NCBI GenBank assembly: GCA_025201805.1
Contig: MU619386.1
Span: 31,394-75,845 of the forward strand
Source of the DNA: Parasitella parasitica NRRL 2501
Taxonomy: Eukaryota; Fungi; Mucoromycota
Reading direction: 5' to 3'
Length of the DNA: 44,452 bases
Shown in pieces: positions 2,556-12,925 of this stretch (its first letter is position 1; the number at the start of each line of letters is the position of its first letter). Under the pieces are notes generated by a model, which saw only the letters and a program-made list of their open reading frames with translations, had not been told where the DNA came from and searched no databases. The position numbers and the translations under genes were made by a program.

Positions 2556-3607
2556 TGTGTTGTTATACTTGTCGAAACAGGGGAATAAAGTCTTTTTTGT
2601 TTCAAATCAGGAAGGTTATCTGTAACACAGATCTGTATGATTGACAAACAATAAGGTACTGTCAGATCAAAGATCAATAGCCTTGTAGTATAATATAATA
2701 CATCGTACCCTGTTAAGGATATGATGTTGCTTGCAAATTATTTTTATCGATTAGTATCGATTAGTATTTTAAATAAGTCACCAAAAATTTATGTGGTTGT
2801 AAAAAGTATAAATAGCAGATGCAAAGTTGAATCTTTAATAAAGTAATCTCAAGTTTTTGTATCTCGTTAATTCAAAGTTTTATTTTATGCTTTTCTTATT
2901 TTCGATCTTGCAGACCTCAACAAAATACTAAGATGTTTTCTCTAGATAAAACCTCAGTATACTTCTATAATAAAGAAGCCCAAACTTGATTATAATTATA
3001 CTTGCATAACGCTTTTATTTTTTATATTTTTTTGATTTTTGTAAATCTTTCAAATTTACTGCAGCCAGAATCAGACTTAAGAGCACTTTACTTCCGTCGA
3101 TATATGCGCGCGCAATATAAATTAGAGTGAAGCTCACAATCTTGAATAAATCGAACTTTCTTTTGAAAATTTTGTCCTGCACTATATATACTTGCTATTC
3201 TATCGCTAAGATACCATATTATAAACAATTGATAATTATTCGAAACCTCTATAACAACGAACGGATCGGACTTCATCCTGGGACAGGATCAATATTGAGA
3301 TCTGCAAGGTTGAAAATAAAATAATTGTATTTACCGAGAAATAAAAACTTGAGCTTTGCATCTGCTATTTATGCTTTTTGCAACTACATAAATTTTGGGT
3401 GAATTATTAAAAATACTAATCGATAAAAGTAATTTGCAAGTAAAATTCTTCTTGACAGGGTAAGATGTATTATTATATTACAACGCCATTCATCTTTAAT
3501 CTGACAGTACCTTAATCTTTGTCAATAACACAGATCTTTGATACAGATAACCTTCTTGATTTGAAACAAAGACTTTACTCTCCTGTTTCGACAAGTTTAG
3601 CAACACA
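2556..3607. mobile_element. Decayed foldback/MITE-like element with long diverged inverted repeats
   Basis: Left arm ~2556-2920 (cttgtcgaaacagggga..aaggtactgtcagat..cttgcagacctcaa) is the diverged reverse complement of right arm ~3295-3607 (ttgagatctgcaag..atctgacagtacctt..cctgtttcgacaag). No convincing ORF. Confidence 0.75.
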
Positions 3608-7609: not shown

Positions 7610-10041
7610 GATTTTCCTAACTTTGCAAGTAAATAACAAAGAAAGAAAAGGAGAAACAAGTTTATTAGTTTTAATACTTTTACAACAACTGCAGGTGTGA
7701 GTGTATGCGGTTATTTAAAGTCAACGTGTGTGCAGCACCAGTCTGTGTTGCTTCCATGATGACAAGAAACATCAATTGTTTTTGAACAAGTATACCAAAT
7801 TATTGAAAGAGCATAGCCCCGGATTTTGCTCTAGCAGACCTTACCAATTATAAAAAAGTTATTTGTTAGAATGAACACCTTGTTAGCATCAAGCATTGCT
7901 CGCTATAGTGATTGTGTATCTTTTTAAGCAAAAGAGTCGATAAGAATTTAAGAAATTCTCTAAATATGCATATTTTATATATGCTAATATCCTGGTGTAC
8001 AAACATTGTTTATAAAAGACTTTTATTTGGGCTTATTAGCTAGACTTGAGTTTCTCAAAACATGTCAAATCTCGATCAAATTGTTTGAAGATGGAAATTA
8101 CTTCTTTTAATTTCGTCGTCGATCCAAATAATTTCATTTTAACAAGTCAGTGAAAGTACAGTACCCAAAGACTCACAAAAGAGAAATTACAAGAAACACA
8201 TAATGAACCACTTTAGTTTGATATTTGGCATTTAAAGTAGCAACCAATAGCTTTAAAAATTCAATGAACGCAACTCTCCGGTTGTAGATCTAGAACAACT
8301 AACCACGTCTTTATACTAACATGCCTTCTCATCTGCCCAAAACAAGGTGGGCAGTTAGAAATGTAATGGAAAATGCCCATTTTGAAACTTTTTCTAATAT
8401 ATAATTATCAATTGCTACGCCAGAAATTAATCATCATAGAGGTTTGCTAGAAAAAACTACTGCGAAACACACCAAAGAATGAAAATCACATGTTGTGATC
8501 ATCAATGCGCTTGTTTTTTTTCATTTTATTTTGATAGAGCTTTCACTCTATCGAATTTGAGAGCTTTTCGCTATGATGTTAATTAGTCGAAAGTATCACG
8601 TTTTACTCCAATCTTGATGCAAGATTCCCGTTTTAGGTATTATTATGCAAAATATAGACTTTTTAACAGAAAATACATTTCCTGCAATCTCATATTTTTT
8701 TCCGATAATAAAGGTGCAATCGCACATTGACCAAAATTTTGATAAAAGCTCTTTTGACATTTAACATAAATATTGCAAGTTGCCTGAGTATATTTTATAG
8801 ATTGGTGACAAAGCGTCAGACAAACTCAACATCCTTTTTTTTTGTGGTGTTCGAAAAAACAACAAGAGAATCCTGCAAAATAAAAGATCAAAATAACGAA
8901 AGGTATGATGGAATCAAGAGAACAAGACATTAAATTTTCAAAGTAACTCCAAGTATTAAAAATAGCTGAGTACATCTGCGAATCGTATAGTTTTTGCTTT
9001 GGCCCAAATTCTGCAAATAAAAGCTCTGCATGCAGTAATTTCCCATTCAACGAACAATAGGTATTTGTATATTGTATATGTATATTAAACACTAAAATAG
9101 GAGATAATTATTGAAATTACCTCGTGTTTCCTGACTTTTTACATTGTATTTAATGGCGATTATGATTTTTATGGCTGTCCACGTTGTACTCCCTCATCGC
9201 CCATTTGAAAAGTGTAGATACTAAGAAGGCTCTTTAGTAACATCCAGATTGAATAGATGTGTGAGCATACAACCTTTATGCTCGGTGGAGACAATCCTCT
9301 AACCTCCTCAATATGTGAGTCATATTGCGGATTTTATTGAACTGTTTCAAAAAAGGCAAATGACTAAAGTCTGAATGCCTTACATAAGAATACAAATCGT
9401 TTTGGGCTATAAATCCTAAAAATAATACGATTACACAAGTGGAGATGATTTATGGAAGTATATAAATCATATACGTGTGAAGAGATAATATTATACATGC
9501 AAATCGGTTTTATTAATAGTTTCATGGATATGACATGTCTTACAAAGGAGCCTGACAAATCTAATCATTATACCAACTAAAATGATCCACAACACATGTG
9601 CTAAATTACATGATAATCTCTCTATTTACAGCCACTTTCTTACTTATTGCTCGTATGTCTTAAAGAACTCACAATGTTGAGAAAACATCTTTTTTATAGA
9701 TGAGTTTTTTGGCTTCTGATTTCCAGGAAAATGCATTATACGAGAAGCGGTACCTTCTTTTTTTATTTTATTTTAGTTCATATGCCTTTTAAAGCATCCT
9801 TTGGTTGAATCTTTCGAATGAAATCACTTGTTTCATGTTGTGGTGAATCCTTATTAAACTGAGATACCACAATTCATAATGGCATCGAGTTCTCGAGGCT
9901 GATACATCTGAGGAATGCTTTTGTAGTCCGCTGTACGGCTTCCATTTTAGAAAGGGGAAACGTTCAAGGTGTGTTCACTGGACATTTGAACAAGTGTTAC
10001 ACTTTAATTGGTCAAGTATCAGATGGATCTAGTGGAAGCAA

Positions 10042-10048
10042 TATAAAA
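10042..10048 (+). promoter_or_regulatory. Putative TATA box of HAC1
   Basis: tataaaa ~160 nt upstream of the ATG, followed by a pyrimidine-rich tract. Confidence 0.45.
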
Positions 10049-10203
10049 TCCTTGCAAACCATCCAAATTTATTTCTTTTTCTCTTTAGTCGACTTTTTTC
10101 TACATTACTTATTTTGATTACTTGTGATTTCCATTGGGTGGTATTTCAGTAACCAAAAGAAATTTATCTCAAATTCATTCAGTCCAATTCAGTTCCAATA
10201 ATT

Positions 10204-11243
10204 ATGAACAACAACAGCAACACCAGCAGCGGCGTTAATGATTCTCTCACAGAGTTATTATCTTTACCTGTTAACTTTACTGTGGATCCTTTATTAGCTA
10301 CAACTCCAAACGGTGCGCCTCAAAAGAGACAAGCCTCATTTTCCTCTGCTTCTTCTGTTACATCTGAAAACGAGCAATCGTCTTCAGAATCTATCGTTTC
10401 TATCAAGAAGTCAAGATTATCTTTGGATGGTAAAGATCAAAAGACTAAAGAAAGGTAATATAAGGCACCCTGTTATATTCTCTAACATTTGCACTAAACG
10501 AACATCTTTTTAGAATTCTTCGTAATCGTGCAGCTGCTCAGGAATCTCGTGATAAAAAACGTAGATATGTCTCTGACCTTGAAGCGTCCAACAAAAAGCT
10601 CGCTCAAGAAAACGAAGAAGTGAATAAACGCGTAAAAACATTGGAACAGCAGAATGCTATATTGAATTCACAACTGGAAGCATTTACTAGACAACTAGCA
10701 AACTTGCAAGCGCAAATTAAATTCAATGCTGCTACTCCCATCTTGTTTAATGACTTTTGCGATTCAGCACGGATCGCGAAGAAAGAATGTTTGATTAACG
10801 AAAAGAAAAATAGTATAGAATTCATCTCTACAACCTCAAAAAGAAGCATCAAATCAGTATGTTGAATTGCCCATCAAGTCCTCTCACGAAAAAATCCACC
10901 CAATGGAAACCCCACTTGTAGAGCCCTGTTTTTTTTGAACTATATGATTTTTATATTTATTTCACCTCTTTGATATTATGAACAACTATTTTTTTTCCCT
11001 GCAGCGGAGGTTGTTAAGCAAGATGAGAATTGCCAGTATGGAAGAGGTTTATTAGTACCAGCTGCCACAGGCACAACTGCAAAACTGACATCACCCATGT
11101 TATCACCTTCGTTCTCATCGGACGAAGATTCTGTGTATTCGCCAAACACAATCGTCAATCAGGATTTCCACTTGGACGATTTATTTGACTGGGATGGTCA
11201 GCAGCAAGTTGTCAACACTATTGGCGGCAATGATACGTTCTAA
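10204..11243 (+). CDS. HAC1: Hac1/Xbp1-type UPR bZIP transcription factor (spliced 248 aa, unspliced 200 aa)
   Basis: bZIP KTKERILRNRAAAQESRDKKRRYVSDLE across spliceosomal intron 10455-10513. Removing 10768-11001 fuses it in frame to an acidic tail (..DFHLDDLFDWD..) ending TAA 11241-11243. Confidence 0.9.
10768..11001 (+). promoter_or_regulatory. Unconventional Ire1-cleaved intron (234 nt)
   Basis: 5' hairpin tttgcgatt-CAG|CACG-gatcgcgaa and 3' hairpin ttcc-CTG|CAGC-ggag, both with 7-nt loops. Flanking exons pair (10739-10756 with 11008-11025). Excision opens a long reading frame. Confidence 0.85.
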
Positions 11244-11374
11244 ATAATAGGTCACTATTTCTGCTTTTTTCCCCATCATTCTCTATACATTTCATGCATT
11301 TTACTCCAGTTCTATTTAATTCACAATTCTTTTTCATATCTTTATTAATAAAGCTCTTGTCACAAAAATATCAT

Positions 11375-12298
11375 TCAGCTATCTAGCAACTGTCTAACGT
11401 TGTTGAAATAAGCGTGTTTCAATGCATCTTGGGCGCTGATTCTTAATTGAGGTTGGTATTGCAGCATTCGAGTTAACAAATCCAAACCTTCTGGATCGAT
11501 GTTTGGCACGAATTGGGATAGGGGCTGTGGCGGATGAACGACTTCTAGAGGTTTGTGTTTATATTCAGGAAGTTGCGAGATGCCTGGCCATGTTTGTTCG
11601 TTTGGTGTCCCCAATAAACGGAAAATCTTTTGCAATTGGTCTTCGTTAGTGGTGCCAGGAAACAGAGGTCTACTGGTATACATTTCAGCCATAATACAGC
11701 CGGCCGACCAGATATCAATGGACGTTGAATACATACGCGAGCCCAGCAACACATCAGGTGCACGGTACCAAAGCGTGACCACCTCATTCGAGAATGTGTT
11801 TACTGGGATACCAAATGCACGAGCTAAGCCGAAATCTCCCAGTTTTAGATGAAGTTGATTATTGATTAGTAGATTCTGCGGCTTCAAATCTCTATGCAGC
11901 ACACGGTGTTCGTGGCAGTAAGCTATTCCTCGAAGCAATTGATACATGAACGATGTGATTGTTTGCGGTCTCAGCGATCCATGAGGACGCGGATTTGAAT
12001 CCATGTACTTTTTCAAATCTTGGTCCATAAATTCAAAAACCAGAGTCAGTGTGTTTTCTGTGTGGATCACATCCTGAAGGCGCACAATATTGGGATGCTT
12101 GAGTTCTTTCATAAGAGAGATTTCTCGGATAGCTGTAGAAGGTGTTCCTTCCTCTGGGTCCAAGTAGATTTCCTTCAAAGCGACAATTTCTCCTGTTTGT
12201 GTGTGTTTGCCTTTGAAGACCGTTGCGTATGTTCCTTCACCAAGTTTTTCTAAACGTGCGTATCTTTGTTGAGGCAGACGGTTCGTGTTGGCTTCCAT
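11375..12298 (-). CDS. PHO85: Cyclin-dependent kinase Pho85/CDK5 type, intronless
   Basis: [70 protein letters not shown]. Confidence 0.93.
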
Positions 12299-12925
12299 AC
12301 TGTTAAAATTTAGAGAGAGAGAAAAGCAAAGAAAGAGAAAAAGATGAGCTTCTTGTGCATTTTGTGTGCATGTGTTAACAAGCAGCTCGTTGGCATTCAA
12401 AGTCAGTTTTGTCTTTCATTTCTTATTACAAGATATGCATTATCGTTCAAACGACATGTATGTATTGTATATATATATAAATATCATTATATTATCAATT
12501 AAATGGTAATACACGACAATAACACAAAGAATAAGACAATCATTTACATGGTATATTTTATAGAAATGTGTATAGTTGTTGAATTGGGGAAATCCTAATC
12601 TATGCTCTTGATTTCTTAGTTTCTACGAATGCTCTTTTCTTGCACAGAAAAAAGGTTACTTCCGTCCATTGCTGCGGTTGAAGATTGCGAACAGGGTATT
12701 CATAGTAACCACTGTAGTATAGTAATAGTTTCCTATACAAAAGTGCTTTTTTTTTTCCGACATGTGTTTGTTATTATTGTTGTCGTGTGTTGGTAATTCA
12801 TTGTTTTGTACCACTTGCCTAATGAAGGAGAATGTTTATACAAATGTATTTTTATATTCAACCCCTCTCTCTTTCTCTGGAAATTAGGCTTCATCTTTCT
12901 TCTTTCAAATTATTTACGCATTCGC

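What the first reader, a model, noticed from the sequence alone, without database searches (positions are those of the whole stretch)
10128..10909. HAC1 intron is perfectly complementary to its own 5' UTR: a yeast-style translational lock in an early-diverging fungus
Seen: TTTCCATTGGGTGG (10128-10141) lies downstream of the TATA-like box and 63-76 nt before the ATG. It is the exact reverse complement of CCACCCAATGGAAA (10896-10909) inside the Ire1-type intron, just after the unspliced stop codon. Pairing extends 4 bp with one bulge (attt/aaat), plus gtg/cac on the other side. A chance 14-mer match between a ~130-nt UTR and a 234-nt intron is roughly 1e-4. Known: in S. cerevisiae the long HAC1 intron pairs with the 5' UTR and blocks translation until Ire1 excises it, whereas filamentous ascomycetes, plants and animals use short frameshifting introns. 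Inference: this Mucorales-type fungus has the same RNA switch, by convergence or ancient retention. I am not aware of it being described outside budding yeasts.
Basis: partly seen in the sequence, partly recalled or inferred. Interest (0 to 1): 0.92.

Follow-up and report, generated by a model that had tools for sequence, protein, structure and literature searches.

The report
HAC1 5'UTR–intron RNA lock in Mucorales
The stress-response gene HAC1 of the mould Parasitella parasitica has a long, Ire1-removed intron that base-pairs with the start of its own mRNA, and because this pairing is kept by matching changes on both sides in all 12 Mucorales and Umbelopsis sequences examined, it is very probably a yeast-like "translation lock" that arose separately in this old fungal lineage.

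Summary
TTTCCATTGGGTGG (10128-10141) and its reverse complement (10896-10909) are the only two copies in the window.

The window is Parasitella parasitica (Mucorales). The gene at 10204-11243 is the HAC1/HacA orthologue, with a 59-nt spliceosomal intron and a 234-nt Ire1-type intron (10768-11001).

RNA contigs from two public runs start at 10108, so the 14-mer lies in the 5'UTR about 20 nt from the RNA end. The mRNA keeps the 234-nt intron after the ordinary intron has been removed.

The same UTR-intron duplex (10-21 contiguous Watson-Crick bp, mostly -32 to -36 kcal/mol) is present in all 12 Mucorales and Umbelopsis sequences examined. Its core, CCAUUGGGUG, is invariant, but the flanks differ between lineages and stay complementary (own partner 17.4 bp versus other species' partner 12.2 bp; permutation p about 1e-5). 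Apart from the two splice hairpins, this core is the only conserved island in the intron.

Endogone, Rhizophagus and a Mortierella-like sequence also have longish introns (107, 182 and 62 nt) but no such pairing.

Selected RNA pairing is therefore well supported. Translational repression is inferred from S. cerevisiae and not shown. No description of it was found in the searchable literature.

The parts
10043..10048 (+). TATAAA box
   Evidence: Read directly from the sequence. A TATAAA at a similar distance upstream is seen in Mucor, Benjaminiella and Phycomyces.
10084..10094 (+). Conserved promoter-proximal motif CTTTAGTCGAC (possible initiator element; function unknown)
   Evidence: Conserved just upstream of the UTR arm in Mucor, Benjaminiella, Cokeromyces, Gilbertella, R. 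arrhizus, Phycomyces and Umbelopsis. It lies upstream of the mapped RNA 5' end.
10108..10203 (+). 5' UTR (96 nt from the mapped RNA 5' end to the ATG); contains no upstream AUG
   Evidence: Contigs of runs X1 and X2 both start at 10108, X1 with an Illumina adapter directly before that base. There is no depth over 9900-10103. Sequence.
10128..10141 (+). 5'UTR arm of the duplex (perfect 14 nt; extended imperfect arm 10123-10146)
10204..10454 (+). Coding exon 1
   Evidence: ORF. The exon end is set by the RNA joint.
10455..10513 (+). Spliceosomal GT-AG intron (59 nt)
   Evidence: An RNA contig in X1 (depth about 10,760) and one in X4 skip exactly 59 nt with GT..AG ends.
10514..10767 (+). Coding exon 2: bZIP domain, up to the Ire1 5' cut
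   Evidence: Pfam bZIP_1 and bZIP_2 above their cut-offs. 100% identical to the Parasitella protein P0001.
10755..10781 (+). 5' splice-site hairpin: 10-bp stem, loop CAG|CACG
   Evidence: Folding z-score -4.05. The sequence is almost invariant in all Mucorales and Umbelopsis.
10768..11001 (+). Ire1-type (unconventional) intron, 234 nt
   Evidence: Boundaries from the conserved hairpins. The spliced frame gives the conserved acidic C-terminus and matches the annotated spliced Mucor protein P0055 (DS|AAEV). The intron is retained in the RNA contig 10512-10966.
10863..10865 (+). Stop codon of the unspliced reading frame (Hac1u, 200 aa)
   Evidence: P0001 is 200 aa.
10896..10909 (+). Intron arm of the duplex (extended imperfect arm 10891-10914); the only conserved island inside the intron
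10994..11010 (+). 3' splice-site hairpin uuuccCUG|CAGCggagg
   Evidence: Identical in every Mucorales sequence and near-identical in Umbelopsis. Thermodynamically weak on its own.
11002..11243 (+). Exon 3: C-terminal acidic region, read only after Ire1 splicing; stop TAA at 11241-11243

Best explanation
This locus is the HAC1/HacA gene of Parasitella parasitica.

Its mature cytoplasmic mRNA keeps a 234-nt intron that only Ire1 can remove. A segment of that intron (10896-10909, extendable to 10891-10914) base-pairs with a cap-proximal segment of the 5'UTR (10128-10141, extendable to 10123-10146).

The duplex lies about 20 nt from the mapped RNA 5' end and is worth about -32 kcal/mol. I propose that it hinders loading or scanning of the 43S pre-initiation complex, so the unspliced mRNA is stored untranslated. 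On ER stress, Ire1 cuts at the two conserved hairpins and the sealing-only Trl1 ligase (with separate healing enzymes) joins the exons. The intron arm is lost, the UTR is freed, and the reading frame now runs into the acidic activation domain.

- **Shown here:** the gene model, the RNA 5' end, retention of the intron in RNA, the complementarity, and its conservation with covariation across Mucorales and Umbelopsidales.
- **Inferred:** that the duplex forms in vivo, that it blocks translation, and that splicing is induced by stress in this species.

The lock most likely arose in the common ancestor of Mucorales and Umbelopsidales, independently of budding yeasts.
For: **Exact complementarity.** The 14-nt match is unique in the window and no shuffle reached it (0 of 2000).

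**Both arms are transcribed.** RNA contigs from two runs start at 10108. A contig with the 59-nt spliceosomal intron removed still carries the Ire1 intron through to 10966.

**Orthology.** Neighbouring genes are conserved (a convergent kinase gene). A profile of these proteins also hits proteins named HacA in Rhizophagus, Aspergillus and Talaromyces. The genome has an Ire1 KEN domain.

**The duplex is present in all 12 ingroup sequences.** Contiguous Watson-Crick lengths are:
- Parasitella 14, Mucor 20, L014 21, L016 20
- Benjaminiella 21, Cokeromyces 16, Gilbertella 18, Choanephora 18
- R. arrhizus 10 (17 with one G-U), Phycomyces 16, Syncephalastrum 18, Umbelopsis 17

. The repeat finder recovers it independently as the top UTR-to-intron inverted repeat in nine of the ten ingroup loci scanned; in R. 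arrhizus, A/T-run pairs fill the five listed.

**Covariation.** Flanking columns carry 2-3 different Watson-Crick pair types. Each UTR pairs further with its own intron than with other species' introns (mean 17.4 versus 12.2 bp; 0 of 100,000 permutations reach the observed sum).

**Conservation pattern.** The intron is otherwise unalignable. Only the two splice hairpins and the CACCCA(AUGG) core are conserved.

**Placement relative to the stop codon.** In all 12 sequences the unspliced stop lies 34-89 nt upstream of the CACCCA core of the intron arm, so ribosomes terminating on the unspliced frame would not unwind it. Yeast has the same layout.

**Duplex energies.** They cluster at -32 to -36 kcal/mol in most species. 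This is stronger than the 11-bp, roughly -22 kcal/mol duplex that suffices in yeast (PMC8881652).

**Splicing evidence in relatives.** R. arrhizus RNA-seq shows a non-canonical intron in the orthologue G6F37_009984, which is P0021 (PMC10946435). A Mucor lusitanicus annotation (P0055) has exactly the predicted junction.
Against: There is no direct evidence on translation: no ribosome, polysome or protein data.

The minimum-free-energy fold of the whole unspliced transcript does not contain the long-range duplex, and the computed pair probability is about 0.001. Forcing the duplex costs only +3.2 kcal/mol out of -263.

Contigs cannot strictly prove a transcription start. The true TSS could be up to about 20 nt further upstream, near the conserved motif at 10084-10094.

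Two Mucor-like transcript contigs extend 46 and 58 nt upstream of the duplex. In yeast, adding 24 nt between the cap and the duplex derepresses translation, so the cap-proximal version of the mechanism may not hold in every species.

No Ire1-spliced form was seen in the Parasitella RNA contigs, although contigs drop rare variants.

The 5' splice loop (CAG|CACG) departs from the canonical CNG|CNGN at position +3.
Confidence: 0.72

Rival explanations
1. The UTR-intron duplex is real and under selection, but its main job is not to block translation. It might instead present or compact the long intron for Ire1, help bring the mRNA to the ER or to Ire1, or protect the stored unspliced mRNA from decay.
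For: Covariation shows pairing, not its consequence. In yeast, translational repression and targeting to Ire1 are themselves linked, according to the reviews read. In some relatives the duplex may lie more than 45 nt from the 5' end, where a hairpin of about -33 kcal/mol is a weaker barrier to scanning (cites the position dependence).
Against: One arm sits in the 5'UTR close to the RNA 5' end, and in Syncephalastrum the extended helix includes the annotated AUG. That is the natural place for control of initiation. Outgroups with comparably long introns (Rhizophagus 182 nt, Endogone 107 nt) manage without the pairing, so it is not needed for Ire1 to process a long intron.
Confidence: 0.17
2. 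The two elements are DNA-level sites: the same protein-binding motif in opposite orientations. The intron strand reads CCAAT, so this could be a CCAAT-box or promoter element. On this view the complementarity is a by-product.
For: The core is invariant over a very long time and contains CCAAT/ATTGG. Endogone has the same 11-mer about 690 nt upstream of its HAC1 ATG, with no partner in its intron.
Against: A shared binding motif explains an identical core. It does not explain why lineage-specific flanks of up to 10 or more nt on either side are complementary only to the flank in the same species. The UTR copy lies downstream of the RNA 5' end, and the other copy sits 750 bp away inside the intron.
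Confidence: 0.04
3. It is a chance inverted repeat, or a mutational by-product (for example template-switch inverted duplication) with no function.
For: None beyond the general AT-richness of the region.
Against: Chance expectation is about 1e-4 in this species alone. The repeat recurs in 12 of 12 ingroup sequences spanning two orders, with covariation, inside an intron that is otherwise unconserved.
Confidence: 0.01

Closest known systems
S. cerevisiae HAC1 5'UTR-intron long-range base pairing (Ruegsegger et al. 2001; Sathe et al. 2015; Uppala et al. 2022, PMC8881652)
   Same: - It is the orthologous gene (an Ire1-spliced bZIP).
- The intron is long (252 nt in yeast from my own knowledge; 234 nt here).
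- A perfect duplex of 11 bp or more joins the 5'UTR to the middle of the intron.
- The duplex is close to the 5' end (about 30 nt in yeast, about 20 nt here).
- A short unspliced C-terminal tail ends before the intron arm.
- The unspliced mRNA accumulates.
   Different: - The pairing sequences are unrelated and the polarity is opposite: G/U-rich arm in the UTR here, C-rich UTR arm in yeast.
- It occurs in Mucoromycota, separated from budding yeasts by many lineages with short 20-29-nt introns.
- The 5' splice loop is CAG|CACG.
[quoted passage not shown]
- Translational repression is untested here.
Rhizopus arrhizus HAC1 (G6F37_009984) with an unannotated non-canonical intron (PMC10946435, RNA 2024)
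   Same: It is the direct orthologue (P0021, locus L008) and has the same splice hairpins. Its intron is 172 nt by my boundaries.
   Different: That paper reports the intron from RNA-seq only. Its main text has no occurrence of 'UTR' or 'base-pair'. The duplex (17 bp with one G-U) is shown here.
Aspergillus and Trichoderma hacA/hac1: 20-nt intron plus stress-induced 5'UTR truncation
   Same: Translation of the HAC1-family mRNA is held back by its 5'UTR until stress (review PMC13703316).
   Different: There the block is a long 5'UTR with uORFs and local pairing, relieved by a shift in TSS. The intron takes no part.
Metazoan XBP1 and plant bZIP60 (26-nt and 23-nt introns)
   Same: Ire1 cleaves at twin hairpins and the C-terminus is switched by splicing.
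   Different: The unspliced mRNA is translated, and the nascent peptide is used for ER targeting. There is no UTR-intron pairing.

Membership tests
Ire1-spliced HAC1/HacA/XBP1-type bZIP mRNA | bZIP protein orthologous to Hac1/HacA | tested here: met
   Pfam bZIP_1 and bZIP_2 above their cut-offs. A profile of the Mucorales proteins reaches proteins named HacA in Rhizophagus, Aspergillus, Talaromyces and Penicillium. The R. arrhizus orthologue is the one called Hac1 in PMC10946435.
Ire1-spliced HAC1/HacA/XBP1-type bZIP mRNA | Two stem-loops with 7-nt loops of type CNG|CNGN at the intron borders | tested here: inconclusive
   The 3' site, CUG|CAGC in a 5-bp stem, is canonical and invariant. The 5' site has a strong 10-bp stem (z -4.05), but its loop is CAG|CACG, with C rather than G at +3, in all Mucorales and Umbelopsis. 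The canonical consensus is taken from my own knowledge of Gonzalez et al. 1999 and Hooks & Griffiths-Jones 2011, which I could not read here.
Ire1-spliced HAC1/HacA/XBP1-type bZIP mRNA | Splicing replaces the C-terminus with an activation domain | tested here: met
   The joint DS|AAEV continues into a conserved acidic tail (..DDLFDWDG..). The same junction appears in the annotated Mucor protein P0055. Intron lengths are not constrained to multiples of 3 across species.
Ire1-spliced HAC1/HacA/XBP1-type bZIP mRNA | Ire1 kinase/RNase encoded in the same genome | tested here: met
   PF06479 (KEN/Ribonuc_2-5A) matches of 86 and 51 bits on G000 contig C3.
Ire1-spliced HAC1/HacA/XBP1-type bZIP mRNA | Intron removed in the cytoplasm on ER stress, in an Ire1-dependent way | not testable with these tools
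   Only unspliced RNA contigs were seen. Splicing in relatives is supported by the literature and by annotation.
Yeast-type HAC1 5'UTR-intron translational lock | Complementarity of 11 bp or more between the 5'UTR and the unconventional intron | tested here: met
   14 perfect bp plus extensions, -31.9 kcal/mol.
Yeast-type HAC1 5'UTR-intron translational lock | Both arms present on the mature unspliced mRNA, with the UTR arm near the 5' end | tested here: met
   RNA contigs start at 10108, 20 nt before the arm. A contig lacking the spliceosomal intron retains the Ire1 intron. Caveat: these are contigs, not 5'-end mapping.
Yeast-type HAC1 5'UTR-intron translational lock | Pairing maintained in evolution (conservation with compensatory change) | tested here: met
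   Present in 12 of 12 ingroup sequences. Own-partner versus other-species helices average 17.4 versus 12.2 bp, permutation p about 1e-5, with several pair types per flank column.
Yeast-type HAC1 5'UTR-intron translational lock | Intron arm lies downstream of the unspliced stop codon | tested here: met
   True in all 12 sequences.
Yeast-type HAC1 5'UTR-intron translational lock | Unspliced mRNA translationally repressed; repression relieved by splicing or by arm mutations and restored by compensatory mutations | not testable with these tools
   Needs reporters, polysome or ribosome profiling, or western blots.
Yeast-type HAC1 5'UTR-intron translational lock | Common descent with the budding-yeast element | tested here: not met
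   Absent from Endogone, Rhizophagus and a Mortierella-like lineage. The arm sequences are unrelated and of opposite polarity. So it works like the yeast lock but is probably not homologous to it.

The most novel reading that the evidence does not exclude
A 5'UTR-intron translational lock on HAC1 mRNA evolved independently of budding yeast. It arose in the common ancestor of Mucorales and Umbelopsidales, a split dated to about 390 My in PMC10946435, which cites timetree.org. Since then it has been universal there, held at a nearly constant duplex strength while the helix slides and re-grows around an invariant 10-nt core. If so, long Ire1 introns repeatedly recruit UTR pairing. Storing HAC1 mRNA untranslated would then be a convergent solution, not a peculiarity of Saccharomyces.
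Probability: 0.55. Interest if true: 0.8.

Novelty: new member of a known kind. Interest (0 to 1): 0.72.

Why it matters
The HAC1 UTR-intron lock is a textbook example of long-range RNA pairing controlling translation. It has so far been treated as a speciality of Saccharomyces and its close relatives. A 2026 review extends it only tentatively to Kluyveromyces marxianus and contrasts it with the short introns of other fungi.

A second, apparently independent instance gives three things:
- a natural comparative data set of compensatory changes;
- a test of which features of the lock are essential (cap proximity, duplex strength of about -33 kcal/mol, arm placed after the unspliced stop);
- a handle on UPR control in Mucorales, the agents of mucormycosis.

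The last point matters because the UPR is a virulence pathway in other fungi and because the RNA-repair machinery of Mucorales is already known to be unusual (sealing-only Trl1; PMC10946435).

It also corrects annotation. Most Mucorales HAC1 gene models in the databases are the truncated unspliced form (140-200 aa).

Tried and rejected
- **Rfam.** A scan of 9900-11500 at E up to 1 found no family.
- **Earlier notes.** There were none for this place.
- **Whole-transcript folding.** The MFE structure pairs the UTR arm weakly and locally (10133-10146 with 10171-10183, with several G-U pairs) and does not show the long-range helix. Forcing the helix costs 3.2 kcal/mol. I treat this as uninformative, not as evidence against, because MFE prediction over 1.2 kb is unreliable for long-range pairs.
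- **ERSE reading.** I considered that CCAAT in the intron arm might be part of an ERSE (CCAAT-N9-CCACG). There is no CCACG at the right spacing, so I rejected it.
- **A second helix.** I considered pairing between the conserved CTTTAGTCGAC motif and the intron motif GTCGTCTCA. They are only partly complementary, the pairing would cross the main helix as a pseudoknot, and the first motif may not be transcribed. This is left unexplained.
- **Hooks & Griffiths-Jones 2011.** This survey of HAC1/XBP1 introns is not held in the library. I cannot exclude that it lists long introns for some zygomycete.
- **The count of structure pairs.** I did not use it. It would have needed a very long typed structure line, so the pair counts were made in a script instead.
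- **Joined exons.** Exons were searched by reference and folding used the contiguous genomic stretch. The one exception is the script, which concatenated two exon stretches in memory to find the reading phase of the 59-nt intron. Nothing joined was saved or searched.
- The single metagenome scan gave only 8 loci.
Full report
**1. The observation**

The 14-mer TTTCCATTGGGTGG is at 10128-10141, and its exact reverse complement is at 10896-10909. No other copy exists in the window, even with one mismatch allowed.

The repeat finder extends the pair to 24 nt at 83% complementarity (10123-10146 / 10891-10914).

The composition-based expectation for any run of 14 or more between the 96-nt UTR and the 234-nt intron is about 4e-4. 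None of 2000 shuffles exceeded 12.

**2. The gene**

The exon-2 translation, taken by reference, is 100% identical to a 200-aa protein of Parasitella parasitica on a 75,845-base contig. That length matches the contig that holds the window.

The gene model on the + strand is:

| Feature | Coordinates | Note |
|---|---|---|
| Exon 1 | 10204-10454 | |
| GT-AG intron | 10455-10513 | 59 nt |
| Exon 2 (bZIP) | 10514-10767 | |
| Unconventional intron | 10768-11001 | 234 nt |
| Exon 3 | 11002-11243 | |

.

The unconventional intron is bounded by two hairpins. The 5' one is UUUUGCGAUU-CAG|CACG-GAUCGCGAAG, with a folding z-score of -4.05. The 3' one is uuucc-CUG|CAGC-ggagg.

Without Ire1 splicing the frame stops at 10863-10865. 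With splicing it continues (DS|AAEV...) into an acidic C-terminus. The same junction is annotated in a 252-aa Mucor lusitanicus protein.

The protein family is Hac1/HacA. Pfam finds bZIP_1 and bZIP_2. A profile of the Mucorales proteins reaches proteins named HacA in Rhizophagus and in Aspergillus, Talaromyces and Penicillium. The R. arrhizus orthologue (P0021 = G6F37_009984) is the one identified as Hac1, with a non-canonical intron seen by RNA-seq, in PMC10946435. The genome also encodes an Ire1 KEN domain.

**3. RNA evidence**

Two public runs hold this locus at 99% identity or more. In X1, a contig skips exactly the 59-nt GT-AG intron, so the material is RNA. That same contig runs uninterrupted from 10512 to 10966, so the processed mRNA retains the 234-nt intron.

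Contigs of X1 and X2 both begin at 10108, in X1 with an Illumina adapter directly in front. There is no depth over 9900-10103.

Contigs cannot strictly define a start. Even so, two runs agree, and the position is plausible relative to the TATAAA at 10043-10048. The 14-mer is therefore transcribed and lies about 20 nt from the RNA 5' end. The UTR has no upstream AUG.

No Ire1-spliced contig was seen. That is expected for unstressed cultures, and contigs drop minor forms in any case.

**4. Comparative test**

I fetched the orthologous loci of Mucor lusitanicus, Gilbertella, a "Rhizopus stolonifer" assembly (identical to Gilbertella here), Benjaminiella, Cokeromyces, Choanephora, R. arrhizus, Phycomyces, Syncephalastrum, Umbelopsis vinacea, Endogone and Rhizophagus. 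A metagenome scan added eight contigs, of which three are Mucor-like intron-less transcripts and two are Mortierella-like.

Synteny with a convergent CDK-like kinase gene supports orthology within Mucorales.

*Splice sites and intron lengths.* Both splice hairpins are nearly invariant in Mucorales and Umbelopsis, and the introns are 110-302 nt long.

*The duplex.* In every one of the 12 non-redundant ingroup sequences, the strongest UTR-intron complementarity runs through the same core: UTR CCAUUGGGUG(G) against intron (C)CACCCAAUGG. It has 10-21 contiguous Watson-Crick pairs and duplex energies mostly between -32 and -36 kcal/mol. One Mucor-like contig (L015) starts inside the UTR arm and was left out.

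*The flanks differ by lineage but remain complementary:*

| Lineage | How the helix extends |
|---|---|
| Mucor | 5' extension UUGUUAUUUCC |
| L014 | 3' extension GGUAUUUGG |
| Benjaminiella, Cokeromyces | AAUAUCUCC, with a U-A to C-G exchange |
| Gilbertella, Choanephora | GGUAAACUUGG |
| Rhizopus, Phycomyces, Umbelopsis | GGUGG(AA) |
| Syncephalastrum | GGUGAC, plus a second block that includes the annotated AUG |

.

*Statistics.* Pairing each UTR with its own intron gives a mean helix of 17.4 bp. Pairing it with another species' intron gives 12.2 bp. None of 100,000 permutations reached the observed sum. Flank columns carry two or three different Watson-Crick pair types. This test ignores relatedness between species, but at least seven lineages show distinct solutions.

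*Other supporting patterns.*
- An alignment of the introns shows only three conserved islands: the two splice hairpins and the CACCCA(AUGG) core.
- In all 12 sequences the unspliced stop codon lies upstream of the intron arm.
- The repeat finder, run blind on the stretch from UTR to intron end, returns this pair as its top hit in nine of the ten ingroup loci scanned. In R. arrhizus, A/T-run pairs fill the five it lists.

**5. Outgroups**

| Outgroup | Intron length | Splice loops | UTR-intron complementarity |
|---|---|---|---|
| Endogone | 107 nt | canonical CUG|CAG | not above shuffles |
| Rhizophagus | 182 nt (by my boundaries) | canonical CUG|CAG | not above shuffles |
| Mortierella-like transcript | 62 nt | canonical CUG|CAG | not above shuffles |

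The z-scores for the outgroups range from -0.5 to 1.1, against 3.5 to 18 in the ingroup. The longest runs are 7-8 nt.

The TSS is unknown in these outgroups, so an arm lying further upstream cannot be excluded. Up to 750 nt upstream were scanned for Endogone and 600 nt for Rhizophagus.

The simplest reading is a gain in the ancestor of Mucorales and Umbelopsidales, on a background of already long introns in Mucoromycota.

**6. Mechanism**

In S. cerevisiae the 5'UTR is 68 nt long and the duplex lies about 30 nt from the cap. Eleven base pairs (about -22 kcal/mol) suffice to repress translation. Single arm mutations, or 24 extra nt between cap and duplex, derepress it (PMC8881652).

The Parasitella arrangement fits this logic: 96-nt UTR, duplex about 20 nt from the RNA end, -32 kcal/mol, arm placed after the unspliced stop. 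I therefore take translational repression of the stored unspliced mRNA, relieved when Ire1 removes the intron arm, as the most likely function (confidence about 0.7).

What weighs against it:
- There are no translation data.
- MFE folding of the 1.2-kb transcript does not choose the long-range helix, although forcing it costs only 3.2 kcal/mol.
- Two Mucor-like transcripts carry 46-58 nt or more upstream of the helix. In those species the block, if present, would have to act on scanning and not on cap access.

The rival explanations are a non-translational role for the same duplex, a DNA-level motif, and chance. They are weighed in their own section.

**7. Comparison with what is known, and novelty**

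The lock works like the budding-yeast HAC1 lock but is probably not homologous to it. The arm sequences are unrelated. The G/U-rich strand is in the UTR here, whereas the yeast UTR arm is C-rich. Intervening fungal lineages have 20-29-nt introns, and the nearest outgroups lack the pairing.

Full-text searches found no description of UTR-intron pairing in Mucorales or Mucoromycota:
- HAC1 + intron + Mucor;
- HAC1 + Rhizopus;
- HAC1 + UTR + intron + base-pairing + translational + Mucorales, which returned 0 papers;
- UPR + Mucorales + Ire1 + Hac1.

The one paper that identifies a Mucorales HAC1 intron does not mention the UTR. A 2026 review covers Ascomycota only and extends the yeast structure tentatively to Kluyveromyces marxianus.

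The 2011 survey by Hooks and Griffiths-Jones could not be read. That is the main gap in the novelty claim.

**8. Procedure notes**

- The script concatenated two exon stretches in memory only, to find the intron phase.

**Verdict**

What remains is an experimental test of translation.

Noticed in passing
window 10084-10094 (and L001, L003, L005, L006, L008, L009, L010 just upstream of their UTR arms): A conserved motif CTTTAG(T/A)CGAC follows a T-rich tract, about 36-40 nt downstream of TATAAA and 14 nt upstream of the mapped RNA 5' end. It may be an initiator-like core-promoter element, or the true TSS region if RNA-seq contigs lose the first roughly 20 nt.
   Followed up: partly
window about 10876-10887 (AAGTCCTCTCAC); equivalent places in the other introns (alignment A2): A second, semi-conserved intron motif GTC(G/C/U)UCUCA(C) lies 10-25 nt 5' of the intron arm in most species. 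It is partly complementary to the CTTTAGTCGAC motif (inverted repeat I2 in L005), but that pairing would cross the main helix. Function unknown.
   Followed up: partly
window 10765-10771 and the orthologous sites: The 5' Ire1 loop is CAG|CACG (C at +3, and C1 could pair with G7) in all Mucorales and Umbelopsis. Endogone, Rhizophagus and the Mortierella-like sequence have CUG|CAG(C/U). This derived loop co-occurs with the clade that has the UTR-intron duplex and the sealing-only Trl1.
   Followed up: partly
L012:1807-1817 (Endogone): The exact 11-mer CCATTGGGTGG lies about 690 nt upstream of the annotated HAC1 ATG, with no complement in the 107-nt intron. It could be chance (about 0.003), or a hint that the UTR motif predates the intron arm.
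   Followed up: partly
L013:3444-3625 (Rhizophagus), L012:3057-3163 (Endogone), L017:617-678 (Mortierella-like): The predicted Ire1 introns of 182, 107 and 62 nt are all much longer than the 20-26 nt typical of Pezizomycotina, animals and plants. Long HAC1 introns may be ancestral in Mucoromycota. The database protein models for these genes do not use these junctions.
   Followed up: partly
window 11241-11377 and 11375-12400 (minus strand): HAC1 and a PHO85/CDK-like kinase gene are convergent, with only 131 nt between their stop codons. An X1 RNA contig runs across both, so their 3'UTRs probably overlap. The gene pair is syntenic in the eight Mucorales loci that show it; Phycomyces L009 has other neighbours.
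   Followed up: no
L003 versus L004: The assembly labelled Rhizopus stolonifer (GCA_003325415.1) is identical to Gilbertella persicaria across the duplex arm segments compared, with the same intron length and N-terminal coding stretch. It differs from the other R. stolonifer protein, P0026. This may be a mislabelled or contaminated assembly.
   Followed up: no
L006:2431-2500 / 3018-3087 (Cokeromyces): Here the UTR-intron complementarity is extended to about 70 nt (79%) by GU/AC- and AU-rich microsatellite-like tracts on both sides, giving -57 kcal/mol. This is by far the strongest duplex of the set.
   Followed up: no
Database proteins P0001, P0003, P0011, P0012, P0018-P0023, P0045 and others: Most Mucorales HAC1 gene models in public annotation are the unspliced, truncated form (136-200 aa). 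Some JGI names for them are clearly wrong ("septal ring factor EnvC", "YdcH", "mechanosensitive channel").
   Followed up: no
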